This document shows positions 8,160-58,033 of a stretch of 64,000 nucleotides of DNA, piece after piece. Below the pieces are notes generated by a model. The model saw only the letters and a program-made list of their open reading frames with translations. It did no database searches and was not told where the DNA came from. Made by a program: the position numbers and the translations under genes. This DNA comes from Octopus sinensis. Taxonomy: Eukaryota. Location of the stretch: NCBI RefSeq assembly GCF_006345805.1, contig NC_042998.1, positions 152,520,001 to 152,584,000 on the forward strand. Reading direction: 5' to 3'. Numbering within the stretch: position 1 is the first letter of the stretch; each line of letters starts with the position of its first letter.

Positions 8160-8345
8160 AATCTATCATCATCATTTAATGCTCTCCATCCATGCTGGCA
8201 TGAGTTGGATGATTTGACAGCAGCTGACATGCCAGAGGACTGGACCAACTCTGTTGTCTGCTTTGGCATGGTTTCTATGGTTGGATTCCCTTCCTAGTGC
8301 CTTCTATATGGCACCAGCACCAACAAAGTTACCAAGTAACTTACA
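8160..8345 (-). mobile_element. RTE 3'-tail fragment
   Basis: (cat)n, then catgctggcatgagttggat...catggtttctatggttggattcccttcc, the reverse complement of the RTE terminus seen at 9830-9973. Confidence 0.75.
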
Positions 8346-8351
8346 AAACAA

Positions 8352-9973
8352 ATATCCTCAACAGTAAGGTGAGGGTTGGCAACGAGTACAGTGAAGAATT
8401 CCGGGTAGGGGTCCACCAAGGCTCAGTCCTCAGCCCCCTCCTATTTATCATAGTCCTCCAGGCAATAACGGAGGAATTCAAGACAGGATGCCCTTGGGAG
8501 CTCCTCTATGCTGATGACATTGCTCTAATAGCTGAGTCACTATCAGAACTGGAGGAGAAGTTTCAGGTGTGGAAGCAAGGATTAGAATCGAAGGGCCCTA
8601 GAGTCAATCTAGCTAAAACCAAAGTCCTAATAAGTAGGAAGGTAGACAAATCACAAACGCCTTCAGATAGATGGCCCTGCTCGATCTGGAGAAAAGGTGT
8701 AGGTAGAAACTCTATAAGATGCACCAAGTGTAAGCTATGGACACATAAGAGGTGCAGCAATGTCAAAGGAAGGCTAACTGGGAAGATAGTTTTTGTATGT
8801 GGCAGATGCTCAGGAACAATAAACACTGGAAATGCTCTGAGACCAACTTCTGTCATTTTCCAGGGAGAAAAACTAGAAATAGTTGATAGCTTCTGTTACC
8901 TAGGTGACCAAGTCAGTAGCGGGGGTGGGTGTGCTGAAAGTGTAACTGCTAGAGTAAGAATAGCTTGGGCAAAGTTCAGAGAGCTCTTACCTCTGCTGGT
9001 GACAAAAGGCCTCTCGCTCAGAGCAAAAGGCAGACTGTATGACGCGTGTGTACGAACAGCCATGCTACATGGCAGTGAAACATGGGCCATGACTGCTGAA
9101 GATATGCGTAAGCTCACAAGGAATGAAGCCAGTATGCTCCGATGGATGTGTAATGTCAGTGTCCATACTCGACAGAGTGTAAGTACCTTGAGAGAAAAGC
9201 TGGACCTAAGAAGCATCAGATGTGGTGTGCAAGAAAGACGTTTGCGCTGGTATGGTCATGTGGTAATGGATGAAGATAGTTGTGTGAAAAAGTGCCACAC
9301 TCTAGCGGTTGAGGGAACCTGTGGAAGAGGCAGACCCAGGAAAACCTGGGACGAGGTGGTGAAGCACGACCTTCGAACTTTAGGTCTCATTGAGGAAATG
9401 ACTAGAGACCGAGACCTCTGGAAGTATGCTGTGCGTGAGAAGACCCGGCAGGACAAGTGAGACCATAACCCGTGGCCTTCTACACGGGATGTAGCCAGTC
9501 CACTTATGCATACCTTCCCTTCTTGGGACACAAATCTCTACTTGTGAAGACCTGTTGAGGCAAGTGAGAATCAGAATCGAAATCGATCAATGGAAATTTC
9601 AGCTGAGATACCAGTGCCGGTGGCACGTGAGAGAACCATCCGTTCGTGGCCATTGCCAGCACCACCCTGACTGGCCTCGTGCCGGTGGCACATAAAAAGC
9701 ACCATCCGTTCGTGGCCGTTGCCCGCCCTGCCTGGCTCCCGTGCTGGTGGCACATAAAAAGCACCATCCGATCGTGGCCGTTTGAGAGACTCATCTGGCA
9801 CATAAAAAGCACCCACTACACTCATGGAGTGGTTGGCGTTAGGAAGGGCATCCAGCTGTAGAAACATTGCCAGATTCAGACTGGGCCTGGTGCAGCCTTC
9901 TGGCTTCCCAGACCCCAGTTGAACCGTCCAACCCATGCTAGCATGGAAAGCGGACGCTAAACGATGATGATGA
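8352..9973 (+). mobile_element. Young 5'-truncated RTE-clade LINE (Expander/Rex3-like): RT C-half, Cys-finger insert, arrayed 3' UTR and (GAT)n tail
   Basis: Open frame to 9460 with VGVHQGSVLSPLLF, LLYADDIAL, FCYLGD and RRLRWYGHV...GRGRPRKTW. Cys-rich insert at 8678-8809. 3' UTR repeats at 9614-9815. Tail acgatgatgatga. Confidence 0.95.
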
Positions 9974-11204: not shown

Positions 11205-11860
11205 CATCGTTTAATGTTCGCTTTCCGTGCTGTCATGGGTTGGACAGTTTGACTGAGGACTAGCAAGCCAGGAGGCTGCACCAGGCTCCAGTCTGTTTTG
11301 GTAAGGTTTCTACAACTGGATGCCCTTCTTAATACCTACCATTCTGAGAGTGTAGTGGGTGCATTTTACGTGTCACCAGCACAGGGGCCAATCAGGTGGC
11401 ACTGACAATGACCTCGCTTGAATGGTGCTTTTTATGTGTCACTAGCATGGGAGCCAGTCAGGCAACACTGGCATTGACCACACTCAAATGGTGCTTTTTA
11501 TGTTCCATGGGCCATGCTTGAAAGGTACCTTTTACATATCACTGGCCACATTCAAATGGTGCTTTTTACGTACCACCGACACGAGTGCCAGTCAGACGGC
11601 ACACTGCTTTGTAATCCAGAAAATCTCTTGCCTCTGATCTTCATGCTGTAAAACATTAGCAAATCTACTTTCTGCTCCCTTCACTGCAAAACTGTCACCT
11701 AGCTTCCCTTCTCTGATACCATCATTTTCCCAGTATTTCCAGGCTTGTCTCTCTGCTTTTATTGCACTGTCTATCTCCTTGTTTCCGATGGTAACCATTG
11801 TTACCCTCCATCTGGCTGGCACCAGCCCTCAGCAGGTTATCCTCTAAGCTATATGTCTCC
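11205..11860 (-). mobile_element. RTE 3' UTR with hairpin-unit array, fused to an ORF linker fragment (internal deletion)
   Basis: (cat)n tail at 11205. Units ggtgctttttaYgtgYcacc.gcac at 11355-11600. Minus ORF 11592..11822 reads AIKAERQAWKYW...ESRFANVL.HEDQR.EIF. Confidence 0.8.
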
Positions 11861-13437: not shown

Positions 13438-13611
13438 ATCATCATTTAATGTCTGTTCTTTTTTTCATGCTAGCATGAGTTGGATGGTTTGACAGGAGCT
13501 GGGAAGCCAAAAAGCTGCACCAGGCTTTAATTGTCTGTTTTGACATGGTTTCTCTGGCTGGATGCCCTTCCTAACACCGACCACTCTACAGAGTGTACTG
13601 GGTACATCAGA
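13438..13611 (-). mobile_element. RTE 3' tail leading directly into the 26-bp satellite
   Basis: atcatcatttaatgtc...catgctagcatgagttggat...gctggatgcccttcctaacacc...gagtgtactgggt. Confidence 0.85.
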
Positions 13612-16975: not shown

Positions 16976-17560
16976 TATCATCATCATCATTTAATGTCCA
17001 TTTTCCCAGCTGGCATTGGTTGGACAGTTTGACTGAAGACTGGTGAGCCAGGGGCTGCACAAGGCTCAATCTGGTCTGGCAACTTTCTACAGCTGGATGC
17101 CCTTCCTAACACCAATCACTCCGAGAGTATAGTGGGTGCTTTTTACGTGCCACCAGCATGAGGGCTAGTCAGGCAGTTCTGGAAATGACCACGTTCATGT
17201 TCAAAAGGTGTTTTGACGTGCTACCTGCAGAGGAGCCAGTCCATCAACGCTGGCAACAATCACACTGGAATGTTGTTTTTCACATGCCACTGGCACATGT
17301 GCCTGTAAGGCAACGCTGGCAATGATCATGCTCAAATGGTACTTTTCAAATGTCATCGGCACGGGAGCCAATCCATGGCCCTGGCAACAATCGCGCTTGG
17401 ATGTGCTTTTAATGTTCTACTGGCATGAGTGCCAATCAGGCGTTACTGTCATCGGCCACATCAGCGATTTTGGTTTGTTTACATTTCCTTCAATAGGTCT
17501 TTGCAAGCAAAGTTCATTGTCCAGTGAATGAGGGGTACTCATAAGTGGCTCGGTTACACC
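16976..17560 (-). mobile_element. RTE 3' UTR fragment with five hairpin units
   Basis: (cat)n tail, gctggatgcccttcctaac, five units of ggtgYttttt..gtgcca..ggcac...gccag-loop-ctggc type, then aggtctttgcaagcaaag. Confidence 0.85.
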
Positions 17561-19271: not shown

Positions 19272-20716
19272 ATATCATCATCATCGGTTAATGTCTGCTT
19301 TCCATGCTAGCATGGGTTGGACAGTTTGACCGGAGTCTGGGAAACCAGGAGGCTGCACCAGGCTCCAGTCTCATCTGGCAGTGTTTCTACAGCTGGATGC
19401 CCTTCCTAATGCCAACCACTCCGTGAGTGGGTGCTTTTTATGTGCCACTGGCACAAGGGCCAGTTAGGGGATATTGGCATTGACCACATTTGAATGGTGC
19501 TTTTTTACATGCCGCCAGTATGGGAGCCAGTTATGTGGTACTGGCAACGATTACACTTGAATGGTGCTTTTACATGCCACTGGCATGGGACCAGTCAGGC
19601 AGCACTGGCATTGACCACACTCAAATGGTACTTTTTATGTGTCACTGGCACGGGTGCCAATCAGATGGTACTCTCATTGGCCACAACAATGACTTCACTT
19701 AACAGGTCTTTGCAAGCACAGTTTATTGCCCAATTATTGAAGGGTACTCTTAAATGGGCTGGTTATGCTGCACTGGCATAGGCCACGGTTACGGTTTCAC
19801 TTGGTTTGCCAGGTCGTCTCAAGCACAGCATATCTCCAAAGGTCTCAGTCAGTGTTTATTGCCCCTGAGCATTTTCCACACACAAAAACTATCTTCCCAG
19901 TTAGCCTTCTTTTGATATTGCTGCACCTCTTATATGTCCATAGGTACATCTTATGGAGTTTCTACCTATGCCTTTTCTACAGATCAAGCAGTACCATCTG
20001 CCTGAAGGGATTTGTGATTTGTCTGCCTACCTGCTTATTAAGACTTTGGTTTTTGCTAGATTGACTCTAAGGCCCTTCGATTCTAATCCTTGCTTCCTCA
20101 CCTGAAACTTCTCTAGTTCTGATAGTGACTTAGCTATTAGAGCAAGGTCATCAATATAGAGAAGCTGCCAGGGGCATCCTGTCTTGGAATTCTTTCGTTA
20201 TTAACTGGAGGACTATGGTGGACCCCTACCCAGAATTCTTCACAATACTCGTTGCCAACCCTCACCTTACTGACAGCATCCCTGTACATGCCTTGTACAG
20301 CTCTCACTAACCACTCATCTGTGCCTAGTTTCTGCATTGACCACCAGCTAAGGGATCAGGGGACCCTGTCAAAGACTTTCTCCATGTCTACGAAAGCCAG
20401 GTACAGAGATTTATCTTTGGCTAGGTATTTTTCCTGCAGTTGTCTTACCAGAAATATAGCATCAGTGGTGCTTTTCCCTGGCACAAACCCAAACTGCATC
20501 CTGCCTAAACTGACTCTCTCCTTAATTAGTTGGGCTATGACCTTCATTACCTGATCCAACAACTTGATACCGCTGTAATTATTTATATCTAAAGTGTCAC
20601 CTTTACTTTTGTAGCAGTTGACTATGGTGCTGCTCCACCAGTCATTGGGTATGACTCCTTCATGTATCACCTGATTGACTATACGGGTGACTAGACTATA
20701 GCCAACACCGCCAGAC
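19272..20716 (-). mobile_element. RTE LINE fragment (3' UTR array plus deleted ORF), truncated at its 5' side by a mariner
   Basis: Tail and 4 hairpin units at 19272-19690. Minus ORFs 20356..20748 (IPNDWWSSTIVNCYKSKGD...QFGFVPGKSTTDAIFLVRQLQEKYL...FVDMEKVFDRVP) and 20137..20337. Confidence 0.88.
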
Positions 20717-20723
20717 ATATATA

Positions 20724-32027: not shown

Positions 32028-33298
32028 TGCAATGCTTGAACGGAGACGTGTAGATTTGTGCTGCATCCAAGAAGTAAAGTGGAGATGAGGTTCTGCTAGG
32101 TTCCTCACAGGCAAAGAACACAGGTACAAGATTTTCTGGGCAGGGAACACTGACGGGATCAGGGGCATAGGTATACTTCTTGCAGAGAAATGGGTTGATA
32201 AGGTAATCGAGGTAGTCAGAGTATGTGACAGAGTACTTAAGATTAGATTAGTGCTTCACCATAGGTTAGCTACCGTTATCTTGGCCTATGCCCCTCAACC
32301 CGGGCTACCGGAGGGGCAGAAAGACCGATTCTATGACACCCTATTGCAGACTACTTCGTTGACGAATGACAGGGACCTTCTCTTTGTGGCTGGTGATTTC
32401 AATGGACATGTTGGATAACATGCCGGGGGATTCCATGGAGGCTATGGTTTTGGTTCCCGCAATGAGGAGGGAACCAGACTGCTGGAGTTCTGCGATGCAA
32501 ATGATCTTATGGTTTGCAATACCAACTTCAGGAAACCCGCCTGTCACCTAGTCACCTGTCATTCTGGCAGACACACTAGCCAAATTAACTACATCATGTT
32601 GAAGATAGGTTTGTGAAAAAGTGCCACACCCTAGATGGAACCTGTGGAAGAGGTAGACCCAGGAAAACCTGGGACAAGGTGGTGAAGCACGACCGTCGAA
32701 CATTAGGCCTCACTGAAGCAATGACTAGTGACCGAGACCTTTGGAAATATGCTGTGTGTGAGAAGACCCGGCAGGACAAGTGAGACCATAACCCGTGGCC
32801 TTTACCAGGGATGTAGCCAGCCCACTTATGCATACCTTTCCTTCTTGGACACAAAATTCTGCTTGCAAAGACCTGTTGAGGCAAGTGATATCAAAATCGA
32901 TCAAAAAATCAATGGAAATTGTAGTTGTGATACCTGTGCTGGTGGCACATAAAAAGCACCATCTGAACGTGGCCATTGCCAGCCTCGCCTGGCACCTGTG
33001 TGGGTGGCACGTAAAAAGCACACAGTGCCGCCTCAACTGACTTCCATGCCTGTGGCACATAAAAAGCACCGACCAATTGTGGCCATTGCCAGCCTCGCCT
33101 GGCACCTGTGCGGGTGGCACGTAAAAGGCACCCACTACACTCACGGAGTGGCTGGCATTAGGAAGGGCATCCAGTTGTAGAAACACTGCCAGATCAGACT
33201 GGAGCCTGGTGCAGCCTCCTGGCTTCCCAGACCCCAGTCAAACCGTCCAACCCATGCTAGCATGGAAAACTGACATTAAACAATGATGATGATGATGA
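32028..33298 (+). mobile_element. Internally deleted RTE: APE domain fused directly to the ORF end and 3' UTR
   Basis: MLERRRVDLCCIQEVKW...AYAPQ.GL...GDFNGHVG...RNEEGTRLLEFCDANDL...NTNF...SQI.Y (32030-32597), then directly the C-terminal KKCHTL...GRPRKTW (32600+), hairpin units and (GAT)n tail. Confidence 0.9.
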
Positions 33299-37429: not shown

Positions 37430-37860
37430 ATATGTGTATATATATGTGTGTGTGTATATATATATATAAATATTCCCATATTTGTCTGAGTGTTGGGTCT
37501 TGTGTGTGCTTGGATAAGATGCAGATGTCAAGTTGACCAAAGTTGCCTCCATGTTGATCTTTGTCATGTTGGTAGAGTATGGAGGACTGTTTTTTGCCAT
37601 CATATTGTCTCAGATGTTGATGTCTTTAGAAGCACCTTCTATGCATCTTATGCTGTAAACTACATTTTCAATTCTACAGTTAATGCCAGGGCCAATCCTA
37701 CATACCATGCAGTTATCATTGGTGCATATGGTATTCTCAAAGGGGTAAGTCCTAATAGTTGTGATCTGATGGAGTTCCCTGGCTTTTCAACAACCTTAAT
37801 GTTGCGTTTGGTCTCCTTCGGAGCTTTCCTAAATCTACGGGCTGTAAAACTAGAAATGTA
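37430..37860 (-). mobile_element. Second PLE GIY-YIG endonuclease fragment (different subfamily), decayed
   Basis: My manual minus translation across frameshifts gives [19 protein letters not shown], then CTNDNCMVCRIGPGINCRIENVVYSIRC, then [23 protein letters not shown]...[16 protein letters not shown]. The YxG/R..EH core appears deleted. Confidence 0.7.
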
Positions 37861-37989
37861 TGTGTGTGTATATATGTGTGTATGTATATGTGTATGTATA
37901 TATGTATGCATATATGTATGTATGTATATATATGTATATATATGTATGTATATATATATGTACATATGTATATATATGTATGTATATAT

Positions 37990-40210: not shown

Positions 40211-42790
40211 GAAAGTCAAATGGCCAGATGGCCATCTCCTCCCTGGAATGACATCACTTGAACAGAGACAGACAGAGTCCTTGTTGGCTCTCACACGCAA
40301 GTTTTTCATGGAGCAAGCAGTGCTTTGGCCAACAAGAGGTGAGAATGTTTTGGACCTCTGTTTCACAAGCAACCCGATGCTCATCCTCAACATAATGGTA
40401 ACACCAACAATTCTCTCAGATCACAACTTAGTAGAGGTAATGATATATGGTATGAGAGAGTTAGTTGAGACGCAGCCATTAGAAAATACCACAGGCCTAT
40501 CCAGTCTAAACTTCCATAAGGCAAACTGGAAGAAGATCAACGAAGAGATCCGAAAACATGACTGGAGTGACTTCATCACCACACAAGACACCAACACACA
40601 TTTCCAACATTTCATGACAACAATACAGAACATATGCCATAAGTTTGTCCGGAGAAAAAAGCCAGCGGGCATAGGAACGTTATTCCCAGAGACAGGAAAA
40701 TACTTATGAGGCGAAGAGCTAAGCTCTCGAAGCCACTGAATGCACGGCAGAGAAACAATGAGGGACTCCACCTGAAACTTTTTGAAACGGAAACTGCACT
40801 CAAACTTTCCTATGAGAAGGAGAGGGCAGAGAGAGAAGCCAGGGCCATAGAGAATATTAAAACAAACCCTAAAGCCTTCTTTAAATTTGCGAAAGAAACC
40901 ACCTCGGTACACTGCAAGATTGGCCCACTCTTTGATAAAAAGGGCTCTCTAACTGAGGACCCCCAAGGGATAAGTGAAATACTAAAGGAACAGTATAAAA
41001 GTGTGTTCACATCCCCTCTGGGGCACATGCAAATCACAAACCCAGAAGTTTTCTTTGATGCCACAACACTCCAAAACCAAACAACAACCATCGACCACAT
41101 AGACATAACAGAGAGGGATGTAATATCTGCCATAGAAGAAATGAGATAAACTCAGCTGCTGGACCAGATGGATTCCCAGCAGTCCTCCTAAAAACATGCA
41201 GGCATGCCCTAGCGGGACCACTGAAGAAGCTCTTCAGTGGTTCCTTGGCTAACGGTAAACTGCCCAGGGCGCTAAAAGAAGGCACCATATGCCCTATCCA
41301 CAAAGGAGGGAGTAGAGCAGAGGCCAAAAACTACAGGCCAGTCTCCCTGATGTCACACATAAGTAAGGTCATGGAACGAATCATCAGAAAAAAAACTGAT
41401 CACGTTCCTCGAAGAAACTAACCGTCTCACTGACACACAGCATGGCTTTCGCCCAGGAAGAAGCTGCCTTACGCAGCTGTTACAACACTACGACTGGGTA
41501 CTGAAACAACTACTGGATCGCTCACAGGTAGATGTGGTATATCTCGACTTGCGAAGGCCTTTGACAAAGTCGACCACGGAGTGATATGTCACAAATTACT
41601 CAGACTCGGCAAAACAGGAAAAGTAGGTGAGTGGATACATGACTTCCTGAAGGACAGAAGCCAGATGGTTGCAGCCAATGGAGCCCTCTCGGGAAAGACA
41701 CCAATAGCAAGCGGGGTGCCACAGGGCACAGTCTTGGGACCCTTGCTGTTTTTGGTGGCGCTCTCTGACATGCCCTTGGTAGCACAAACAACATCCCTCA
41801 CTAGCTATGCTGATGACACAAAGGTAGCACAGGCAATCAAAACCCAGCTGATGCTGACCTTTTACAACAAGATCTGGATGCCATATACAAATGGGCTGAA
41901 GACAACAACATGCAATTTAATGCTGGTAAATTTCAAGCCTTACAATATCAAGCTGTAAACACATATACATTACAACACAACTATACTGGTCCAGGAGGGA
42001 TCGAAATCCCAGTATCGAAATCAATACGGGACCTGGGGATAGACATGAGTGACGATGCATCTTTTTCTTCACACATCGCGAAGGTGGCGACAATGTGCAG
42101 ACGACTCACTGGCTGGATCCTGAGGACATTCCGGACAAGAGACTGCGAGACCATGTTGACACTATGGAGGACATTTGTCCTAAGCCGCCTGGACTACTGC
42201 TCCCAACTGTGGTCACCGCATAGTGTCAAACTAACCACAGAGCTTGAGACAATCCAAAGACATTTCACCAAGAGGATTTCCACCATGAAAGAAAAGAACT
42301 ATTGGGAGAGGCTTAGGGAACTCAATTTGTACTCCTTGGAACGAAGACGAGAGAGATATGCAGTGATATACATATGGAAAATCCTGGAGGGACTAGCACC
42401 AAATTTTGGAATTGAGAGCTGTTCCAATCCCCGTACAGGACGTCACTGTGTGGTGCCAAAGGTCCCGTCTACCACATCCAGGGTAAGGAGCAGATACTGT
42501 AATAGCCTGGGGTTCAGGGGCCCTCAGCTGTTCAACAAACTGCCAAGAAAACTAAGAGATCTACATGATGCGGATGTGGACATTTTCAAAAAACATCTAG
42601 ACAAGCTGCTTTCCAGGATCCCAGATGAACCCACTGCAAGGTACGAAGGTAACCTAAGGGCAGCAGCTACAAACTCTCTCTTAGATCAGTGGCCAGCCAC
42701 GGCAAACTGGACTTAGAGAGGGTAGCAACAAGGGCGGTGCCCCAGCATGGCCTCAGCCGGATGGCTGAAACAAGTAAAAGAGTAAAAGAG
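40211..42790 (+). mobile_element. CR1-group LINE (second subfamily), APE C-terminus through RT, several frameshifts
   Basis: PTRGENVLDLCFT...SDHNLV, AAGPDGFP...KNYRPVSL, GVPQGTVLGPLLF...SYADDTK and [10 protein letters not shown]. Tail gctgaaacaagtaaaagagtaaaagag. Confidence 0.95.
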
Positions 42791-43607
42791 TATATATGTG
42801 TATATATATATGTATATATATATATGTATATATATGTATATATATGTGTATATATATATATATGTTTATATGTATATATATATATGTGTATATATATATA
42901 TGTATGTATATATGTGTATATATATATGTATATATATATATGTATATATATATGTGTGTATATATATATGTATAAAAATATGTATATATGTGTGTGTATA
43001 TATATATGTATATATGTGTGTATATATATATGTATATATATGTATATATATGTGTGTATATATATATATGTATATATATGTATATATATATGTGTATATA
43101 TATATGTATATATATATATGTGTATATATATGTGTATATATATATGTATATATATGTATATAATATATGTATATATATATATGTGTATATATATGTATAT
43201 ATATATGTATATATATATGTATATATATATGTATATATATATGTATATATATATTGTATATATATATATATATATTATATATGTGTATATATATGTATAT
43301 ATATATGTGTATATATATGTATATATATATGTGTATATATATATGTGTATATATATGTGTATATATATATGTATATATATGTGTATATATATGTATATAT
43401 GTGTATATATATATGTATATATATGTGTATATATATATGTATATATATGTGTATATATATATGTATATATATGTGTATATATATATGTATATATATATAT
43501 GTATATATGTATATATATTATGTATATATATGTATTATATATATGTATATATATATGTATATATATATGTATATATGTATATATATATGTATATATATGT
43601 ATATATG

Positions 43608-43638
<31 letters not shown>

Positions 43639-44048
43639 GTATATATTATATATGTATAATATATATATGTATCTATATATATATGTATATATTATATATG
43701 TATATATATATATATGTGTATATATATATGTATTATATATATGTGTATATATATGTATATATATTGTGTATATATATATTATATGTATATATTATGTATA
43801 TATATATGTGTATATATATATACGTATATATATATGTGTATATATATATGTATATATATATATGTATATATATGTATATATATATGTGTATATATATATG
43901 TATATATATATGTGTATATATATGTATATATATATGTGTATATATATGTATATATATATGTATATATATATGTATTTATACATATGTATATATATGTATA
44001 TATATATATATGTATATATATATGTATTTATACATATGTATATATATG

Positions 44049-44079
<31 letters not shown>

Positions 44080-44560
44080 GTGTATATATATATGTATATA
44101 TATATATGTATATATACATATGTGTATATATATACATGTATGTATATATATATGTATGTATATATATATATGTATGTATATATATATATGTATGTATATA
44201 TATATATATGTATGTATATATATATATATGTATGTATATATATATATGTATATATTATATATGTATGTATACATATATATATGTATGTATACATATATAT
44301 ATGTATATCTATATGTATACATATATATATGTATGTATAATATATGTATGTATACATATATATATGTATGTATAATATATATATGTATATATATATATAT
44401 GTATGTATACATATATATGTATATATATATATATGTATACATATATATATGTATTATATATATGTATACATATATATATGTATATATATATATGTATGTA
44501 TACATATATATATGTATATATATATATGTATACATATATATATGTATATATATATGTATG

Positions 44561-44599
<39 letters not shown>

Positions 44600-44602
44600 G
44601 TA
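42791..44602. repeat. TA-rich microsatellite array
   Basis: About 1.8 kb of (TA)nTG and TACA units. Confidence 0.97.
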
Positions 44603-45460
44603 TGCGCTACTGGCACACAAAGGTAAATGACGTGAAGACTGGATACACTGGCCCAGGAAGAATTGCAATCCCTGAGTCAAAATCAGTGCGTGACCTGGGC
44701 ATTGACATGAGCAATGATGCATCTTTCCAAATGCATATTGCTAATCTGGTGATAAAATGCAGACGGCTAGCTGGATGGATTCTCCGAACTTTCAGAACAA
44801 GAGAGAAGGAGACACTGATGGTCCTATGGAAAACATTTGTCCTCAGCCGCTTGGACTACTGCTCCCAACTTTGGTCACCACACAATATAAAACAAACAGC
44901 AGAACTCGAAGCAACTCAGAGAAGCTACACAAAGAAAATCGTCTCAATGCAAAATGTCAGCTACTGGGAAAGACTGAAGGTATTAACCTCTTCTCCCTGG
45001 AGCGGAGGCGGGAGAGATATGCAGTAATATACATCTGGAAAATCCTGGAGGGTCTTATCCCAAACTTTGGCATTCAAAGTTACTCCAACCGCAGAACGGG
45101 GCGCCGCTGCGTGGTGCCAAGGATTCCAACATCACCATCAAAATACAGGTCCAGATACTGCAACAGCTTGGGTTTCAGAGGACCACAGCTTTTCAACATC
45201 CTCCCTAAATGCCTGAGAGACTTACATGGTGTGGATGTGGGTTTCTTTAAAACTAAACTGGATCTCTTCTTGTTGGAAGTCCCAGATGAACCTACCTCAC
45301 GACAGGAGACGCGGATGCGGGCAGCAGCATCGAACTCCCTTGTTGATCAAGTGCCACGTATCAGAGGTGGATTCACAAACTAGTGTGGCTCATTCAGCGG
45401 TGGTGCCCCAGCATGGCCGCGGCCTTCGGGCTAAAACATTTTTAAGGATTTAAGGATTTA
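44603..45460 (+). mobile_element. CR1-group LINE 3' fragment (third tail type)
   Basis: [19 protein letters not shown]...[20 protein letters not shown]...GFRGPQLFN. Tail ctaaaacatttttaaggatttaaggattt. Confidence 0.95.
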
Positions 45461-45915
45461 TATGTATGTATACATATATATATGTATATATATATATATG
45501 TATACATATATATATGTATATATATATATATGTATGTATACATATATATATGTATATATATATATGTATGTATATATATATGTATGTATATATATATATG
45601 TATGTATATATATATGTATGTATATATATATGTATGTATATATATATATGTATGTATTCATATATATATGTATATATATATATATGTATGTATACATATA
45701 TATATGTATGTATATATATATATGTATATATATATATATGTATGTATGTATATATATATGTATGTATACATATATATATGTATACATATATATATGTATA
45801 TATATATATGTATGTATACATATATATATATGTATGTATACATATATATATATGTATGTATACATATATATATGTATGTATACATATATATATATATGTA
45901 TATATATATATGTAA

Positions 45916-45950
<35 letters not shown>

Positions 45951-47245
45951 CATATATATATGTATGTATACATATATATATGTATGTATACATATATATA
46001 TGTATGTATACATATATATATGTATGTATACATATATATATGTATGTATACATATATGTATGTATACATATATATATGTATGTATACATATATGTATGTA
46101 TACATATATATATGTATGTATACATATATATATGTATACATATATATATGTATGTATACATATATATATATGTATACATATATATATGTATGTATGCATA
46201 TATATATGTATATATATATATGTATGTATGCATATATAAATGTATATATATATGTATTTATGCATATATATATGTATATATATATATGTATGTATGCATA
46301 TATAAATGTATATATATATGTATTTATACATATATATGTATATATATGTGTATGTATATATATGTATATATATATGTGTATTTATACATATACATATGTA
46401 TATATATATGTATGTATGCATATATAAATGTATATATATATGTATTTATACATATATATGTATATATATGTGTATGTATATATATGTATATATATATGTG
46501 TATTTATACATATACATATGTATATATATATATATATGTATGTATACATATATATATGTATATATATATATGTATTTATACATATATATATGTATATATA
46601 TATATATGTATTTATACATATATATATGTATATATATATATGTATTTATACATATATATATGTATATATATATATGTATTTATACATATATATATGTATA
46701 TATATATGTATTTATACGTATATATATATATGTATTTATACGTATATATATGTATATATATATATGTATGTATACGTATATATACGTATATATATGTATA
46801 TATATATGTATGTATACATATATATATATATGTATATATATATATATGTATGTATACATATATATATGTATATATATATATGTATGTATACATATATATA
46901 TGTATATATATATATATGTATGTATACATATATATATGTATATATATGTATGTATATATATGTGTGTATATATATATATATATATGTATGTATATATGTA
47001 TGTATATATATATGTGTATGTATATATGTATGTATATATATATGTGTATATATATATGTATGTATATATATATGTGTATATATATATGTATGTATATATA
47101 TATGTGTATATATATATGTATGTATATATATATGTGTATATATATATGTATGTATATATATATGTGTATATATATATGTATGTATATATATATGTATGTA
47201 TATATATATGTATGTATATATATATGTATGTATATATATATGTAT

Positions 47246-47286
<41 letters not shown>

Positions 47287-47289
47287 TGT
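45461..47289. repeat. TA-rich microsatellite array with higher-order sub-periods
   Basis: About 1.8 kb, with blocks of tatgtatgtatacatatata, tgtatttatacata and a ~28-nt tatatatatgtgtatatatatatgtatg unit near 47000-47190. Confidence 0.97.
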
Positions 47290-50200
47290 ACCACAAACCG
47301 CCAACGTGTTGTTGAAAGGGCAGCTGCTGAACAAGAATCTTTTTTGTGCATGGCACAAAAGATTGTACAGCAGCTATCCTGGCTCCATCAAACCCAAGCT
47401 CGCAGATGGGACTACCCACAGTTCACAAGACCACCACAGCAAATAGACCCAAGGTGGACACCACCGGCAACAGCATACACCTCACCTCGATGCTCCTACT
47501 GAACATCAGAGGACTACTAACACACAGTAACAGGACAAAAGTCCCGTTCTTGAGAGAAGCCTTATGCATAGCACCTACGGAAACACATTTGAAACCGGAC
47601 ATAGCGGATGCGGAAGTACACATACCACAGTATGTTGTACTACGGACCGACAGGAAAGAAAGGAGTCATGGAGGAGTTGCTATGTACATCCGTGAGTACC
47701 TCACACCCCAGGTCCTTTTGTCATACTCAAACTCGGTGTGTGACACACTAATTGTACATGTAAGGCAACTTGGTGTAGTTGTGTGTGCTACATATCGCCC
47801 TACAGATGCCCCGAGCTATATGGGCAAGTTTGAAGACTGCCTTATAAAAATAGAAGAAGTTCTAGTCACACTAGAACAGCACATAAGTGTTCTTCTCATG
47901 GGAGACTTCAACCTGCCCAATGTCAGATGACCCGAGGGCCTTTCTCTCCCAGGAATGACACGATGTGAACGGGGACAGGCGAAGTCCCTCCTGAACCTCA
48001 TCAACACCCTGTACATGGAGCAAGTAATACTCCAACCAACCAGGGCAGGTAACACACTGGATCTCTGCTTCACAAATAATATGGATCTCATCCATAATGT
48101 GAAAGTGACGCCGACACTACTCTCGGATCACAACATGGTAGAGCTGACCATGTACGGGCCAAAGGAAACAATGGACATGCAGCCTACAAGAAACTCTCAG
48201 AATCTTTCCAGCTTGAACTTCAATAAGGCAAACTGGAAACAAATTGAGAAAGAGATCCTCAAACAAAACTGGCCTGAATGTCTCTCCTCGCCGGACATCG
48301 ACATGAAACTTCAACAATTCATGAAAATTCTAATGAGATGGCGCACAAAAATCTCAAATCGCCTAAACAAACAAATTGAAAGCAGTGAAAAGTCCCGCCT
48401 GAAAATGAAACTGTTGGAAATTGAAAATTGTCTGCAACTCTCCCATGAAAAGGAAAGAGCAGACATAGAAGCCTGGGCTATAGACAACATAAAATCTAAC
48501 CCAGAGCTTTCTACAGGTATGCCAAAGAAACAGCTACGGTGCACTGTAGGATAGGGCCACTCCTTGAAAGGGATGGCACACTCACAGGAAATCCAATGAG
48601 GGTAAGTGAAATACTAAATGAGCAATTCAAGAGTGTTTTCCCCCCACCCCTTGGGCATTTCCAAATCAGCAATCCAACTGACTTCTTCACCACTGCAGAT
48701 ATGGGGTCAGAGGCGGGGATGATTGATTACATCAATATAAAGGAAGACGATGTAATAAAGGCTATAGATGAGATGGAAACAAACTCAGCTACTGGCCCCG
48801 ATGGATTCCCAGCAATCCTTCTAAAAGTATGTAAGAGGGTCCTAGCAAGGCCACTGCTGTCTCTCTTTCAGAGCTTCCTTGCAACTGGCAAACTTCCAAG
48901 TAAACTGAAGGAAGGTAAAATATGCCCTATTCATAAAGGAGGTAGCAGAGCGGAGGCCAAGAACTACAGACCTATCTCCCTAATCTCACACATCAGCAAG
49001 GTCATGGAACGAATAGTCAGAAGGAAACTAATCACCTTCCTTGAAGAAAATGACTTGCTGCCTGACACCCAACATGGTTTCCGACCAGGAAGAAGCTGCT
49101 TAACTCAGCTCCTGCAGCACTATGACTGGGTGCTGAAACAACTGCTCAACCACTCAAATGTGGAAGTCATATATCTCGACTTCGCAAAGGCCTTCGATAA
49201 AGTCGATCATGGAATGATATGTCGCAAACTGCGTGATCTTGGCATAGTTGGAAAACTAGGAGAATGGTGGTAACATCCAATGGGGCCACTTGCATTAACA
49301 CGCAAATAGTGAGCGGTGTTCCGCAGGGCACTGTTTTGGGACCACTACTGTTCATAATGGCCCTCTCAGACATGCCCTCAGCCACGCAGAGAGCCACGAT
49401 CACAAGTTATGCAGATGATACAAAAGTCTCACAGGCAATACAGAACCCTGAAGACACTAAGCACCTGCAATGTGAGCTGGACGAAATATACAAGTGGGCT
49501 GAAATGAATAGCATGCAGTTCAATGCTGAAAAGTTTCAAGCTTTATACTATCAGCATGCAAAACTGAATGCAATACCCAATGAATACACTGGACCCGGAG
49601 GGATTGCAATCCCAGAGGCACAATCAGTGCGTGACTTGGGTATTCACATGAGTGATGACGTGACCTTTCATGTACATGTTGCTAAACTGGCAATGAAATG
49701 TAGACGGCTGGCTGGATGGATTCTTAGAACCTTTAGAACAAGAGAACATGAAACCATGATGGTCCTCTGGAAGACACTTGTCCTAAGCCACTTTGACTAT
49801 TGCTCTCAGCTATGGTCACCATCCAGTGTCAAGATGATCACAGAACTTGAGGCGATCCAACGAAGCTACACGAAGAAGATAGCCTCTGTGCAGCATATGA
49901 GCTACTGGGAAAGACTCAAGAGATTAAAGCTCTATTCCCTGGAGCGTAGGCGAGAAAGATATGCCATAATATATATCTGGAAGATCCTGGAAGGACTTGT
50001 CCCAAACTTTGGCATCGAGAGTCACACAAATGCCAGAACCGGGCACTACTGCGTAGTACCAAGGACTCCAAATTTGCCATCAAGACGTAGGACAAGATAT
50101 TGTGATAGCCTGGGCTTCAGAAGCCCACAGCTCTTCAATATCCTCCCAAAGAACCTGAGGGACCTGCATGGTGTAGATGCGGATGTCTTTAAAGTAGGAC

Positions 50201-50405
50201 TGGACCTCTTCCTGTCAGGTGTCCCGGATGAACCAACTTCACGGCAGGAGGTGCAGATGAGGGCAGCTGCATCGAACTCTCTCATGCATCAGATGGCGTT
50301 TGCTAAAAAGCATCCGTGAGGTAAAATCGTGTAGCAAACCAAATGGCGGTGCCCCAGCATGGCCACAGCTCATTAGCTGAAACTGGAAAAATCAAAATCA
50401 AAATC
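47290..50405 (+). mobile_element. Near full-length ORF2 CR1-group LINE (APE plus RT), with small deletions and frameshifts
   Basis: LLNIRGL...TETHL...RTDR...GGVAMYI...YRP...MGDFNLP, PTRAGNTLDL...SDHN, ATGPDGFP...KNYRPISL...QHGFRPGRSC...[23 protein letters not shown]...YADD. Tail gctgaaactggaaaaatc(aaaatc)2. Confidence 0.97.
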
Positions 50406-50430
50406 ATATATATATGTATATATATATATG

Positions 50431-50461
<31 letters not shown>

Positions 50462-50991
50462 GTATGTATATATATATGTATGTATATATATATGTATATA
50501 TATATATGTATGTATGTATATATATATATGTATGTATATAATATATGTATATATATATATGTATGTATGTATATATATATATGTATGTATGTATATATAT
50601 ATATATATATATGTATGTATATATATATATGTATGTATATATATATATGTATGTATATATATATATGTATGTATATATATATATGTATGTATATATATAT
50701 ATGTATGTATATATATATATGTATGTATATATATATGTATGTATATATATATATGTATGTATATATATATGTATGTATATATATATGTATATATATATAT
50801 ATATATGTAGATATATATATATATGTACGTATACATATATATATATATGTATGTATACATATATATATGTATGTATACATATATATATGTATGTATACAT
50901 ATATATATATGTGTATATGTATCTATGTATGTATATATATGGGTGTGTATATATATGTGTGTGTGTGTGTATATATATGTGTGTGTGTATG

Positions 50992-51024
<33 letters not shown>

Positions 51025-56164: not shown

Positions 56165-58033
56165 CATGACCCTCTATTGCCATCCGATTCCATTATTAAA
56201 ATGATTTTGAATCGAGAGCTTGAGTCATGTTTTACTTTGCATTTCTAAATTGTTATCTTGACTCTCATAGCACAGATTTTATCAACCGATATTAAGATAT
56301 TTTCTGCTTTTCCCTGCATACCTGTATTAATTTTGTTCAATGTTCAAATATGTCTGAAAGATATGCCAATTAGGTGCACCAAAGATCGTCTTGAATCAGA
56401 TCATTCTTTTGATTTTCTTCAAAAAGTTTAAGCATCATTTCTCTCAATTTGTATACACACCAATGCACACAACCTTTTGAAAGCCAACAAATCTCTATGT
56501 GTAGTAGATGTTTCTTGAAATTTGCTCCCATTTCTTCACAAATACGAGCAAATAATTTTGATCTAAGAGGTCTACTTTTGATGTAATAGACCATTTGAAC
56601 CACTTCATTTATAACTCTTCATAAATCATCTCCAACAGTTTGCACAATTAGTGTTTCATGATGCAAAAAACAGTGAGTAATTATATTTGTATTGTCTTAT
56701 TTTGCTAAATTTGTAAAACCTTTTACTGAACCTACCATTGAGAGTGTGCCATCTGTGCATATTCCTACACAGTTTAACCATAACAAATTATTTTCCCTCA
56801 TTAAGGATTCTAAAGCTTCACCTCTAGCTCTCAATGGATGTTCTAGACAACACAAGAATTGCTCAATAATTCTGTCATTATAAATGAAACATATAAAAAC
56901 CATTAATTATGCTAACCCATAGACATCTGTTGATTCATCTAACAGCAATGCAAATATGATATTATCTTGAAAAATATCCTTCATTTGCAGCTTAATGTCA
57001 TCAGACATATCTTGAATTTGTCGTTCTATTGTGTTATCTGCCAGAGGAATTTTATTAACTTCTATCTCAAATTCGGGTCCAAACATTGTTCGAACAATAG
57101 CACAGCAAGATTCCTTTATAGTACTTTCAGCAGTACTGTGTCATTCCTTGTTTTTGGCAATTATTTGAGCAACCAAGTAACTTACCTCTTGAACTTTGTC
57201 TGATGTCTTCTTTCTCTTTGTGACCATTGAAGCCTGCTTTTTTTAGAGATTTTGAAAGTTCAATGAAGTATTCCACTGGTTTTGTTGACAAGTTTCCATA
57301 TCTAGTGCTGAAATGACGCTTTGTTTGGTACCATACTTTCATTTGCATGTATATCCCCACAAGCTAACACAAGGGACTAGGGTTCTTTTCATTTCCAGAA
57401 AATGTGAAGCTCAGTTTTATATAATCTTTGTTGTATTAAAATTTTTTTCCCTGTGCCAGTGACACATAAAATGCACCATCCGAATGTGGCCGTTGCCAGT
57501 GCAGCCTCCACTGGCTTCTGTGCCGGTGGCACATAAAAAGCACCATCCGAACGTGACCGATGCCAACCCTGCCTCGAATGGCTTCTGTGCTGGTGGCACA
57601 TAAAAAGCACCATCCGAACGTGGCCGATGCCAGCACCGCCTTGACTGGCTTCTGTGCCGGTAGCACATAAAAAAGCACCAACCGATTGTGGCCGATGCCA
57701 GACCCCTCTGGCACCTGTGCAGGTGGCACGTAAAAAGCACCCACTACACTCGCAGAGTGGTTGGCGTTAGGAAGGGCATCCAGCTGTAGAAACACTGCCA
57801 GATCAGACTGGAGCCTGGGGCAGCCCCTGGCTCCCCAGACCCCGGTCGAACCGTCCAACCCGTGCTAGCGCGGAAAACAGACGTTAAACGATGATGATGA
57901 TGATGATGTGTCCTTCTCACTCACTGATGCAGGTTGTTCAACAGTTGTCTGAGCGGTTTCCTTTGTAGTTGTTGAATTTTGTTCATTGGAAATGTCAAGA
58001 TCTGCAACTTTTCTTAATTAAAAACTTATCCAT
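56165..58033 (-). mobile_element. hAT (Buster/Charlie-like) transposase pseudogene, interrupted by an RTE 3' fragment
   Basis: Minus frames MDKFLIKK (ATG at 58033), YIKLSFTFSGNE, KRHFSTRYGNLSTKPVEYF, CVGICTDGT.SMVG...GF...AK, and VYYIKSRPLRSKLFARICEEMG....LLH.EI.WLSKG. Confidence 0.88.
57453..57907 (+). mobile_element. Young RTE 3' UTR fragment with a 67/67/67/63-nt unit array and (GAT)n tail
   Basis: Units start at 57453, 57520, 57587, 57654 and 57717 (partial), followed by cactacactc...ggttggcgttaggaagggcatccagctgtagaaac...gttaaacgatgatgatg. Confidence 0.95.

What the first reader, a model, noticed from the sequence alone, without database searches (positions are those of the whole stretch)
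57453..57741. Repeat-and-variable-loop array of double hairpins in the RTE 3' UTR (best candidate for something undescribed)
Seen: units of 67, 67, 67 and 63 nt plus a partial one. Each has hairpin 1 GTGCC-ggt-GGCAC, a linker ATAAAAAGCACCATCCGAACGTGGCCG(A/T)T, and hairpin 2 GCCAG-loop-CTGGC. The loops differ while the frame is constant: tgcagcctcca, ccctgcctcga, caccgccttga, acccct. Loop-proximal bases sometimes extend the stem (GCCAGTG/CACTGGC; TGCCAGA/TCTGGCA). The same array with 3-5 units and other loops occurs at 9614-9815, 11355-11600, 17140-17470, 19430-19690 and 32935-33135 (e.g. caccaccctga, cctcgc, cgttgatgga, taccacataa, tgttgcctga). The layout looks like a repeat-spacer array attached to an RT/endonuclease element. 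Caveat: most loops fit N4-5-GCCT-(T)GA and some recur between copies, so variation is concentrated in 4-5 nt. That favours diverged unit subtypes of a structured RNA (RNP assembly, export or multivalent ORF2 binding) over acquired spacers.
Basis: partly seen in the sequence, partly recalled or inferred. Interest (0 to 1): 0.72.

Follow-up and report, generated by a model that had tools for sequence, protein, structure and literature searches.

The report
Minisatellite in an octopus LINE tail
The repeat is real, but it is a variable-number tandem repeat built from partial copies of the 3' tail of an octopus RTE-type jumping gene, sitting in a dead truncated copy, with no sign of acquired spacers or of a selected RNA fold.

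Summary
The array is confirmed: 67, 67, 67 and 63 nt units plus a 25-nt partial unit at 57451-57741.

It lies in the roughly 540-nt 3' UTR of an Octopus RTE-like LINE (reverse transcriptase plus a PHD-like finger). The copy at 57451-57908 is a 5'-truncated insertion that starts inside the array.

Each unit is a degenerate partial duplicate of the element's own conserved tail. It joins the first 25 nt (hairpin 1 plus ATAAAAAGCACC) to a derivative of tail positions about 79-125.

The loops are not spacers:
- They descend from one ancestral segment, about CGCCGCCTGA, with two CpGs.
- They are inherited position by position between copies.
- They match no flank.
- Once CpG decay is removed they vary no more than the linker.

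The hairpins are short palindromes. Their folding energy is no better than shuffled sequence, and they show no covariation.

Two things keep a functional reading open at about 0.2. The stems and A-rich box change 2-3 times more slowly than the rest. Arrays also persist in a lineage whose protein is only 69% identical.

Relatives in a clam and two unknown hosts have almost no 3' UTR and no array.

Verdict: an ordinary transposon-internal minisatellite, a new member of a known kind, of low interest.

The parts
57451..57741 (+). Tandem array, 4.4 units of 63-67 nt: 57453-57519, 57520-57586, 57587-57653, 57654-57716 and partial 57717-57741. Each unit is hairpin 1 (GTGCC-GGT-GGCAC), an A-rich box (ATAAAAAGCACC), a linker (ATCCGAACGTGGCCGAT), hairpin 2 (GCCAG-loop-CTGGC) and a TTCT or ACCT junction.
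   Evidence: TRF; sequence; nhmmer unit hits
57717..57741 (+). Last, partial unit. It is also the first 25 nt of the conserved tail (GTGCAGGTGGCACGTAAAAAGCACC). This module is present in every tail-bearing family and is the seed of the tandem units.
   Evidence: Tail alignment; module census
57742..57849 (+). 5' and middle domains of the tail. They hold the CACTC-GCA-GAGTG hairpin (57747-57759), the block GGAAGGGCATCCAGCTGTAGAAAC (57770-57793, 9 copies in the window), AGATCAGACTGG (57800-57811) and the variable hairpin GGAGCC-TGGGG-CAG-CCCCT-GGCTCC (57810-57834).
57850..57889 (+). Ancient terminal motif ACCGTCCAACCCGTGCTAGCGCGGAAAACAGACGTTAAAC, with hairpin CCGTGC-TA-GCGCGG (57860-57873). It is shared with relatives at 55-57% protein identity, where it encodes the ORF's C-terminus and stop codon. 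It is the likely site recognised by the reverse transcriptase.
57890..57908 (+). (GAT)n microsatellite at the 3' end of the element.
   Evidence: The same tail ends the clam, L002, L006 and L007 relatives.
8297..9460 (+). C-terminal 387 codons of the parent LINE ORF in another copy: RT with YADD, a PHD-like finger and the GRGRPRKTW...DLWKYAV end. It is followed by a roughly 150-nt spacer, the array at 9614-9813, the tail at 9793-9973 and (GAT)n.
9614..9813 (+). Sister array, 2.6 units, in the copy that keeps the ORF.
11358..11582 (-). Sister array. This copy is also 5'-truncated inside the array.
17135..17461 (-). Sister array, about 5 older and CpG-depleted units.
19430..19685 (-). Sister array, 3.6 units. 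The copy extends into the RT ORF up to about 20748.
32936..33132 (+). Sister array, with two short-loop units and one internally deleted unit. The ORF end lies upstream at about 32700-32790.

Best explanation
The feature is a variable-number tandem repeat (minisatellite) inside the long 3' UTR of an Octopus RTE-type LINE.

The copy at 57451-57908 is a roughly 455-bp, 5'-truncated and therefore dead insertion. It keeps only 4.4 repeat units, the 170-nt tail and (GAT)n.

Each 62-67-nt unit is a degenerate, internally deleted duplicate of the 5' half of the element's own tail. It joins tail positions 1-25 (hairpin 1 plus ATAAAAAGCACC) to a derivative of tail positions about 79-125 (linker plus hairpin 2).

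Shown here:
- Arrays are inherited by daughter copies from their master elements, with unit order and loops intact.
- Unit number and integrity vary between subfamilies.
- Loop differences are ordinary divergence of one ancestral loop, about CGCCGCCTGA, dominated by CpG-to-TG/CA decay.

Inferred:
- The array arose and changes length by reverse-transcriptase template switching or slippage on the repeated GCACC / GGTGGCAC microhomologies just after the tail has been copied. Later replication slippage or unequal exchange could also contribute.
- The array is nearly neutral for the element.
- The real cis signal for target-primed reverse transcription is the tail, above all the terminal hairpin CCAUGC-UA-GCAUGG next to (GAU)n, which is conserved across phyla.
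- The modest conservation of the stems and A-rich box reflects their origin from a functional tail module. They may still bind the element's protein weakly.
For: The array belongs to a LINE:
- The ORF with RVT_1 and a PHD-like finger ends 150 nt before array 9614.
- That ORF is 81-84% identical to Octopus RT proteins.
- Seven of ten arrays in the window and in the O. vulgaris locus L001 are preceded by the LINE's UTR or ORF. Three, including this one, are truncated inside the array.

Units derive from the tail:
- The last partial unit is also the first 25 nt of the tail in all families.
- The rest of unit 57453 aligns 34/41 with tail segment ATCAGACTGGAGCC..GTGCAGCCTC..CTGGCTTC, z = 3.3-5.5.
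- Twenty-two of 27 units have their best match inside tail positions 60-130, and 8 of them reach p <= 0.035.

Loops are inherited:
- CACCACCCTGA (9614) corresponds to CGCCACCCTGA (L001:3751).
- The last unit before the tail has a short loop and a ...CTGGCACCT junction in 57654, 33047 and L001:11578.

CpG decay explains much of the variety:
- The ancestral unit has 8 CpGs in 66 nt, two of them in the 5' half of the loop.
- The CpG transition frequency is 0.27-0.52 per site.
- The non-CpG rate in the loop (0.19) is no higher than in the linker (0.23) or the junction (0.33).
- CpG observed/expected in copies ranges from 0.20 to 0.68 against a window background of 0.34.

No support for a selected fold:
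- 85.2% of cells are paired against 84.5% in shuffles. The only pair changed on both sides (1-13, G-C to A-U) sits at two CpG sites.
- Folding z-scores are unremarkable, and Rfam finds nothing.
- Hairpin 1 is lost in the 3' half of a 26-nt sister array and weakened in L002.

The array is dispensable:
- The clam relative has a roughly 45-nt UTR.
- In L006 and L007 the ORF runs to within about 8 nt of (GAT)n.
- Tail families at 7599 and 62186 have no array.
- Truncated or fused units are tolerated at 9741 and 32998.
Against: - Stems and the A-rich box have non-CpG substitution rates of 0.07-0.10, against 0.19-0.33 in the linker, loop and junction. Post-insertion decay should be uniform, so some constraint or shared ancestry in master lineages is implied. 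The counts are not phylogenetically independent.
- Within this young copy, loops differ at about 6 of 13 positions while the frames differ at about 6 of 56.
- Arrays built on the same 25-nt module exist in three forms: 62-67 nt units here, 26 nt at 13599-14124 and 52 nt in L002. The full unit architecture is recognisable in L002, whose RT is only 69% identical (z = 4.5). Such persistence could mean selection for multiple copies.
- Only about 27 full units from two loci were available, nearly all from dead copies. The covariation test therefore has little power to reject a structure in the active masters.
- The template-switching origin is inferred, not observed.
Confidence: 0.65

Rival explanations
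1. The array is a selected, multivalent RNA module. Each unit keeps a binding site (hairpin 1 / A-rich box, hairpin 2) for the RTE protein or a host factor. Several copies upstream of the true tail would raise the local protein concentration, favouring cis-preference, RNP assembly or RNA stability.
For: - Stems and the A-rich box evolve 2-3 times more slowly than the linker, loop and junction at non-CpG sites.
- The repeated module is the most 5' conserved block of the tail in every family.
- Arrays of this module arose or persist in three architectures, and in a lineage with 69% protein identity.
- The cephalopod elements keep a roughly 500-nt UTR, whereas relatives have almost none.
Against: - No covariation, and folding no better than shuffles.
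- Hairpin 1 is not conserved across module families. An alternative helix, GGTGY/GCACC, replaces it in the 26-nt array.
- Units are often truncated or fused, and numbers vary from 2 to 5.
- Tail-only families spread without any array.
Confidence: 0.2
2. The spacer, array and tail form a captured module. An RTE that originally had almost no 3' UTR fused, by template switch or read-through, to a non-autonomous RTE-tail retroposon that already carried the minisatellite. On this view the array is primarily a feature of octopus SINE-like elements rather than of the LINE.
For: - Directly after the stop codon, frame +1 reads ETITRGLLHGM*. This resembles the C-terminus ITRLTHASMENGR* of relatives whose ORF ends at the (GAT)n tail. 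A vestigial original 3' end therefore lies upstream of the array.
- The present tail aligns colinearly with the last roughly 45 codons of such an ORF, including RSDW and the same TAA stop (z = 6.3).
- The tail is shared by other families with different bodies at 7599, 13571 and 62186.
- RTE is known to spawn bipartite non-autonomous elements and SINE bodies (PMC5786205).
Against: - No head (tRNA or 5S) was found next to any array.
- All array-bearing copies that extend further upstream run into this LINE's UTR.
- The fossil-coding alignment is significant only for the youngest copies.
- This rival concerns origin and is compatible with the main explanation of what the array is now.
Confidence: 0.1
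3. The array acts at the DNA level. The CpG-rich palindromes (58% G+C in a 37% G+C window) would serve as protein-binding sites, a promoter or insulator, or a source or target of small RNAs.
For: - Young copies are CpG-rich islands, with observed/expected 0.62-0.68 against 0.34 for the window.
- The antisense strand folds slightly better than the sense strand, z = -2.84.
Against: - Nothing tested here points to it.
- Copies lose their CpGs with age like neutral DNA.
- The 67-nt period and unit decay give no conserved motif beyond those inherited from the tail.
Confidence: 0.04
4. The array is a repeat-spacer system in which the loops are acquired sequences.
For: Only the visual layout, with constant frames and differing loops in this one copy.
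Against: - Loops are 6-13 nt and alignable to one ancestral sequence.
- They are inherited at the same unit position in different copies.
- There is no match to flanks at up to 2 mismatches, with 0.08 hits expected.
- Unit 1's loop is nearly identical to the tail's own hairpin, TGCAGCCTCC.
Confidence: 0.01

Closest known systems
RTE-clade LINEs and the repeats they carry, including octopus RTE-2_OV (Petrosino et al. 2022, PMC9115989), Tay et al. 2010 and Malik & Eickbush 1998
   Same: - A single RT ORF ending in GRPRKTW...W, with a microsatellite (GAT)n 3' end.
- Massive 5' truncation, and a tail shared with non-autonomous families.
- The octopus RTE described in the literature also has a zinc finger and a roughly 600-nt, largely repetitive 3' UTR.
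   Different: - Typical RTEs, including this element's own relatives in a clam and in L006/L007, have almost no 3' UTR.
- Here a roughly 540-nt UTR holds a 62-67-nt minisatellite made of partial tail copies.
- Identity with RTE-2_OV could not be checked, because that sequence is not held.
VNTR regions inside retroposons, such as the SVA VNTR and the tandem 5' monomers of mouse L1
   Same: Head-to-tail units of tens of bases, G+C-rich, with copy number varying between insertions and subfamilies. They are carried passively or semi-functionally inside a retroposon mobilised by a LINE.
   Different: - The array lies immediately upstream of the LINE's own 3' recognition tail and derives from that tail.
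- It is not a promoter array, since it is at the 3' end.
- The unit contains two short palindromes.
3' stem-loop recognition signals of stringent-type LINEs, such as eel UnaL2 and zebrafish ZfL2 (Kajikawa & Okada 2002; review PMC3747384)
   Same: A conserved hairpin next to short 3' repeats, shared by LINE and non-autonomous partners, with compensatory changes. The terminal CCAUGC-UA-GCAUGG hairpin here fits this description.
   Different: The array hairpins lie 130-420 nt upstream, show no compensatory change and are absent in relatives. They are copies of a different, 5' module of the tail.
Tandem repeats embedded in mollusc transposons that seed satellites (pearl/CvA-type elements, Helitron-associated repeats; named from general knowledge)
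   Same: A mollusc transposon carrying an internal array with a variable number of units.
   Different: Those are DNA-transposon or Helitron-linked arrays of about 150-190-bp units. This one is in a non-LTR retrotransposon, has 26-67-nt units, and no independent satellite expansion was seen in the window.

Membership tests
RTE-clade non-LTR retrotransposon (3' region) | Encodes a reverse transcriptase of non-LTR type | tested here: met
   Pfam RVT_1 E = 4.4e-13 on ORF 8297-9460. Further RT pieces lie at 10467-10775(-) and 20356-20748(-).
RTE-clade non-LTR retrotransposon (3' region) | RT phylogeny places it in the RTE clade, and an APE endonuclease lies upstream in the same ORF | not tested
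   No reference RT set was available, and all copies read are 5'-truncated before the endonuclease. Indirect support: an octopus LINE with a zinc finger and a roughly 600-nt UTR was placed in RTE by phylogeny (PMC9115989).
RTE-clade non-LTR retrotransposon (3' region) | Very short 3' UTR ending in a short tandem repeat | tested here: inconclusive
   The (GAT)n tail is met. The short UTR is met in relatives L005, L006 and L007 but not in the octopus element, whose UTR is about 540 nt.
Minisatellite / VNTR inside a retroposon | Head-to-tail units of 10-100 nt, beyond chance | tested here: met
   TRF period 67, 4.4 copies, score 356. Seven 24-mer matches against 0 expected.
Minisatellite / VNTR inside a retroposon | Unit number varies between copies of the same element family | tested here: met
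   Between 2.2 and about 5 units in ten arrays, with deleted or fused units.
Structured RNA element supported by evolution | Compensatory base changes in the proposed helices | tested here: not met
   85.2% paired against 84.5% in shuffles. One pair has both-side changes, and both sides are CpG sites. The covariation score is 0.107 against 0.106. Power is low, with 19 units from dead copies.
Structured RNA element supported by evolution | Folding energy lower than that of shuffled sequence, or a match to a curated RNA family | tested here: not met
   z = -1.74 for the array plus tail, and -1.7 to +1.3 for single units. There are no Rfam hits at gathering score.
Stringent-type LINE 3' recognition stem-loop | Conserved hairpin adjacent to the 3' repeats, shared by LINE and partners, with compensatory changes | tested here: met
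   This is met for the terminal hairpin at 57860-57873, not for the array. CCATGC/GCATGG is conserved to relatives at 55-57% protein identity. The variants CCGTGC/GCGCGG and CTCATGC/GCATGA keep the pairing.
Stringent-type LINE 3' recognition stem-loop | Required in cis for retrotransposition | not testable with these tools
   This needs a retrotransposition assay.
Repeat-spacer (acquired-insert) array | Unrelated inserts between constant repeats, differing between otherwise identical arrays and matching external sequences | tested here: not met
   Loops are alignable to one ancestor, inherited by position and have no flank matches.

The most novel reading that the evidence does not exclude
Cephalopod RTE elements have repeatedly multimerised the 5' module of their recognition tail (GGTGGCAC-RTAAAAA-GCACC) into arrays of 26-, 52- and 62-67-nt units. 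On this reading the arrays are kept by selection as multivalent binding platforms for the element's protein or a host RNA-binding factor. That would help explain the success of tail-sharing retroposons, which make up a large part of octopus genomes.
Probability: 0.15. Interest if true: 0.5.

Novelty: new member of a known kind. Interest (0 to 1): 0.2.

Why it matters
The finding matters mostly as annotation. It shows that a conspicuous 'hairpin array' seen many times per 64 kb of octopus DNA is the variable 3' UTR minisatellite of one RTE-type LINE and of its truncated copies. It is not a new kind of programmable or structured-RNA system.

This helps repeat annotation in cephalopods. Variable unit numbers can split one family into many apparent 'unclassified SINE' families. 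The recent O. vulgaris annotation lists 893 such families (PMC13282606).

The anatomy also gives testable boundaries for the cis signals of an element reported to be active in the octopus brain. From 5' to 3' it runs: a vestigial old 3' end after the stop codon, a spacer, the array of partial tail copies, the fossil-coding tail, then the ancient terminal hairpin and (GAT)n.

If the minority reading of a selected multivalent binding array were true, it would be a modestly interesting example of a LINE amplifying its own recognition module.

Tried and rejected
- Rfam scan of the whole window at gathering thresholds found nothing.
- ARAGORN found no tRNA-like heads, so there is no evidence that the units or copies are tRNA-derived SINEs.
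- An exact-pattern scan of JGI metagenome contigs for the tail block gave one irrelevant partial hit, L004. No further octopus copies could be collected that way.
- The look-up of P0120 failed.
- The host of the ENA contigs L002 and L003 could not be identified from the literature.
- The supplements of PMC9115989 held only a truncated transcriptome, not the RTE-2_OV sequence. Identity with that element is therefore untested.
- Literature searches for LINE 3' UTR tandem repeats found no description of this array.
- A profile search of units with a tail HMM gave no hits, because the sequences are too short for nhmmer. Smith-Waterman alignment with shuffles was used instead.
- An alternative helix, GGTG/CACC, was considered in place of hairpin 1. 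It is the better-kept pairing in the 26-nt family and in one L002 unit, but weaker in the 67-nt units. Neither helix is universal.
- Coding potential of the array was rejected. The period of 67 is not a multiple of 3, and the minus-strand ORFs at 57417-57858 arise only because the repeats lack stop codons.
- The idea that ATAAAAAGCACC is a fossil of the GRPRKTW codons is suggestive in a global alignment but not significant on its own. It is not claimed.
Full report
**1. The observation**

Tandem Repeats Finder reports an array at 57451-57741 with period 67, 4.4 copies and 82% matches. Read directly, the units are 57453-57519, 57520-57586 and 57587-57653 (67 nt each), 57654-57716 (63 nt) and a partial unit of 25 nt at 57717-57741.

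A 24-mer from the frame occurs 7 times in the window, against 0 in 100 shuffles. The repeat is real.

The two hairpins are short palindromes with 5-bp stems, and several are imperfect even in this copy. Only unit 2 has a perfect GTGCC/GGCAC, and unit 2's second hairpin is GCCAA/ATGGC.

**2. What the array belongs to**

The window is Octopus DNA. ORF 8297-9460 carries a reverse transcriptase domain (RVT_1) and a PHD-like finger. It is 81-84% identical to O. bimaculoides and O. vulgaris proteins, and 45-57% identical to proteins of Hydractinia, corals, a clam and amphioxus.

In that copy the order is:
- stop codon at 9458-9460;
- about 150 nt of spacer;
- the array at 9614-9813;
- a conserved tail of about 170 nt;
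- (GAT)n.

The tail block GGAAGGGCATCCAGCTGTAGAAAC occurs 9 times in the window. More sensitive searching finds still more, older tails.

I read ten arrays, six in the window and four in the O. vulgaris locus L001. Seven are preceded by this LINE's UTR or ORF. Three, including 57453, begin inside the array. That is the usual random 5' truncation of LINE insertions.

The finding is therefore a dead copy of about 455 bp: 4.4 units, the tail and (GAT)6. A run of T lies 5-11 nt upstream of its 5' junction. TGTGCC at the 5' junction and TGTGTCC just after (GAT)n allow a short target duplication or microhomology junction. The exact 5' end is thus uncertain by about 7 nt.

**3. Is it RTE?**

I did not run an RT phylogeny. 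Several features fit the RTE clade:
- the (GAT)n end;
- the C-terminal GRGRPRKTW...DLWKYAV motif;
- relatives whose ORF runs almost to the microsatellite.

The clam copy L005 has a UTR of about 45 nt. In L006 and L007 the stop codon lies within GTTAAAC, about 8 nt before the repeats.

Petrosino et al. placed an octopus LINE in RTE by phylogeny. That element has a zinc finger and a 3' UTR of about 600 nt 'made up mostly of a microsatellite' (PMC9115989).

**4. Anatomy and origin of the unit**

The last partial unit is also the first 25 nt of the tail (GTGCNGGTGGCACRTAAAAAGCACC). This module heads the tail in every family, including those without arrays.

The remainder of unit 57453 aligns 34/41 with the tail segment ATCAGACTGGAGCC..GTGCAGCCTC..CTGGCTTC, with z = 3.3-5.5 against four tails. 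Across 27 units, 22 have their best local match within tail positions 60-130, and 8 are individually significant at p <= 0.035.

A unit is therefore a partial, internally deleted duplicate of the tail's 5' half. The so-called hairpins are inherited from tail sequence.

Sister families multimerised the same module differently:
- 26-nt units, about 20 copies, at 13599-14124. The unit is hairpin 1 plus the A-rich box only.
- 52-nt units in L002, an ENA metagenome contig whose RT is 69% identical.

L002 also keeps one long unit with a recognisable linker plus hairpin 2 (z = 4.5). The unit architecture is therefore older than the split between these two lineages.

**5. The wider 3' UTR**

Immediately after the stop codon, the +1 frame reads ETITRGLLHGM*. 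This resembles the C-terminus ITRLTHASMENGR* of L006 and L007. A vestigial original 3' end therefore lies upstream of the spacer and array.

The present tail aligns colinearly with the last roughly 45 codons of such an ORF. AGATCAGACTGG corresponds to RSDW, and the same TAA stop is present. The fit is z = 6.3 for the youngest copy and weaker for decayed ones.

The terminal motif ACCGTCCAACCCATGCTAGCATGGAAAAYGGACGTTAAAC is conserved to relatives at 55-57% protein identity. Its hairpin keeps pairing through double changes, CCGTGC/GCGCGG in this copy and CTCATGC/GCATGA at 13435.

I infer two things. The spacer, array and tail were appended to an RTE that once had almost no UTR. The terminal hairpin next to (GAU)n is the real recognition signal, as in stringent-type LINEs (PMC3747384).

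**6. Are the loops special?**

A CpG-aware ancestral unit is GTGCCGGTGGCACGTAAAAAGCACCATCCGAGCGTGGCCGTTGCCAGCGCCGCCTGACTGGCTCCC. It has 8 CpGs in 66 nt, two of them in the 5' half of the loop (CGCCG).

Most observed loops are TG/CA derivatives of that segment: TGCCG, CACCG, CGCCA, TGCCA, CACCA, TGTTG and CGTTG.

Non-CpG substitution rates by region are:

| Region | Rate |
|---|---|
| Hairpin 2 stem | 0.07 |
| Hairpin 1 stem | 0.085 |
| A-rich box | 0.10 |
| Hairpin 1 loop | 0.11 |
| Hairpin 2 loop | 0.19 |
| Linker | 0.23 |
| Inter-unit junction | 0.33 |

The loop is not uniquely variable.

CpG observed/expected in copies runs from 0.20 to 0.68, against 0.34 for the window. The 57453 copy is among the youngest.

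Loops are inherited at the same unit position in different copies:
- 9614 and L001:3751 share the same loop apart from one CpG change.
- The short-loop last unit ...CTGGCACCT occurs in 57654, 33047 and L001:11578.

The short loop arises by a 4-nt slippage deletion, CTGA|CTGG, which preserves the hairpin. No loop matches the flanks of its own copy. Spacer acquisition is excluded as far as these data reach.

**7. Is it a structured RNA?**

Folding gives these z-scores against shuffles:
- sense array plus tail: -1.74;
- antisense: -2.84;
- eight single units: -1.7 to +1.3.

I tested three helices (hairpin 1, CCAU/GUGG and hairpin 2) on 19 long-loop units. Cells are 85.2% paired against 84.5% in column shuffles. 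Only pair 1-13 changes on both sides (G-C to A-U, 3 cells), and both positions are CpG sites, at the unit boundary and in CACG.

Across 49 instances of the 25-nt module, hairpin 1 has at least 4 of 5 pairs in 34. It is lost in the 3' half of the 26-nt array, where an alternative GGTGC/GCACC helix is complete.

There is thus no positive evidence for a selected fold. The test is weak, however, because nearly all units come from dead copies that decay neutrally.

**8. What keeps a functional reading open**

Post-insertion decay should be uniform. The 2-3-fold lower rate in the stems and A-rich box must therefore come from divergence among units in the master lineages. That points to some constraint, or to shared ancestry inflating the counts.

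Within this young copy, loops differ at about 6 of 13 positions, against about 6 of 56 in the frames. Arrays of the same module also persist in several architectures and lineages.

I put about 0.2 on a selected multivalent binding role.

**9. Mechanism adopted**

*Shown.* This is an inherited, length-variable minisatellite of partial tail copies, in the 3' UTR of an octopus RTE-type LINE and in its truncated progeny.

*Inferred.* The array is generated and resized by reverse-transcriptase template switching or slippage at the repeated GCACC/GGTGGCAC microhomologies once the tail has been copied, or by later replication slippage. It is close to neutral. The tail and its terminal hairpin provide the cis function.

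**10. Novelty**

Minisatellites inside retroposons, and repeat-rich RTE 3' ends, are known kinds. The repetitive UTR of an octopus RTE has been mentioned in print.

The specific anatomy was not found in the papers I could search. This covers units as partial tail duplicates, the vestigial upstream 3' end and the fossil-coding tail. Repbase and Dfam could not be consulted.

I rate it a new member of a known kind, with low interest.

Noticed in passing
window 13599-14124 (-): A 26-nt minisatellite of about 20 units lies directly upstream of the same conserved tail in a different family. The unit equals the first 26 nt (hairpin 1 plus A-rich box) of the 67-nt unit. In its 3' half hairpin 1 is lost, while an alternative GGTGC/GCACC helix is complete.
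   Followed up: partly
window 9461-9500 (+); also 32780-32815 and L001:11265-11300: Just after the LINE stop codon, the +1 frame reads ETITRGLLHGM*. This resembles the C-terminus ITRLTHASMENGR* of relatives whose ORF ends at the (GAT)n tail. A hairpin CCCGTG...CACGGG is still present. This looks like a vestigial original 3' end, implying the spacer, array and tail were appended later.
   Followed up: partly
window 57752-57889 (+): The conserved tail aligns colinearly with the last roughly 45 codons of related RTE ORFs (L007). AGATCAGACTGG corresponds to RSDW, and the same TAA lies in GTTAAAC. The tail looks like fossil coding sequence of an RTE 3' end. The fit is z = 6.3 for this youngest copy and weak for decayed ones.
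   Followed up: partly
window 57860-57873 (+); 13435-13623 (-); L006:4823-4872; L007:1090-1147: The terminal hairpin CCATGC-TA-GCATGG next to (GAT)n is conserved between octopus and relatives at 55-57% protein identity. Changes on both arms keep the pairing (CCGTGC/GCGCGG and CTCATGC/GCATGA). It is the best candidate for the RT recognition signal.
   Followed up: partly
window 8690-8810 (+) within ORF 8297-9460: A PHD-like cysteine/histidine finger (CSI[C/W]RKGVGRNSIRCTKCKLWTHKRCS...FVCGRC) is inserted between the RT palm (YADD) and the C-terminal region. It is shared by hundreds of relatives in cnidarians, molluscs and amphioxus (Pfam PHD E = 0.006, below the curated cut-off).
   Followed up: no
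window 38080-39300 (-), 40248-42716 (+), 44344-45383 (+), 47346-50319 (+): Four copies of a second LINE family carry an APE endonuclease and RT, with a C-terminus ...[18 protein letters not shown].... Each is followed at its 3' end by TA-rich microsatellites of up to 1.8 kb (37859-37992, 42791-44603, 45459-47287, 50406-51024). This suggests either tail-seeded microsatellite expansion or insertion into (TA)n.
   Followed up: no
window 21109-21856 (+): There is a mariner-like transposase remnant (...LSPTNYHFFKHL...) beside the upstream end of the LINE copy that ends at 19275.
   Followed up: no
L002:1494-2037 (ENA metagenome contig, host unknown): A related LINE with 69% protein identity has a roughly 520-nt 3' UTR with 52-nt tandem units built on the same GGTGGCACGTAAAA(T)CACC module. 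The tail block GAGTGGTTGGCGTTAGGAAGGGCATCCAGCTGTAGAAA is 100% identical to the octopus one. That is far more conserved than the protein.
   Followed up: partly
window 8165-8304 (-), 28216-28373 (-), 30162-30302 (-), 7576-7628 (+): Older, diverged copies of the same tail without arrays lie at these positions. Together with the nine clear copies, the tail occurs roughly once per 5 kb of this window.
   Followed up: no
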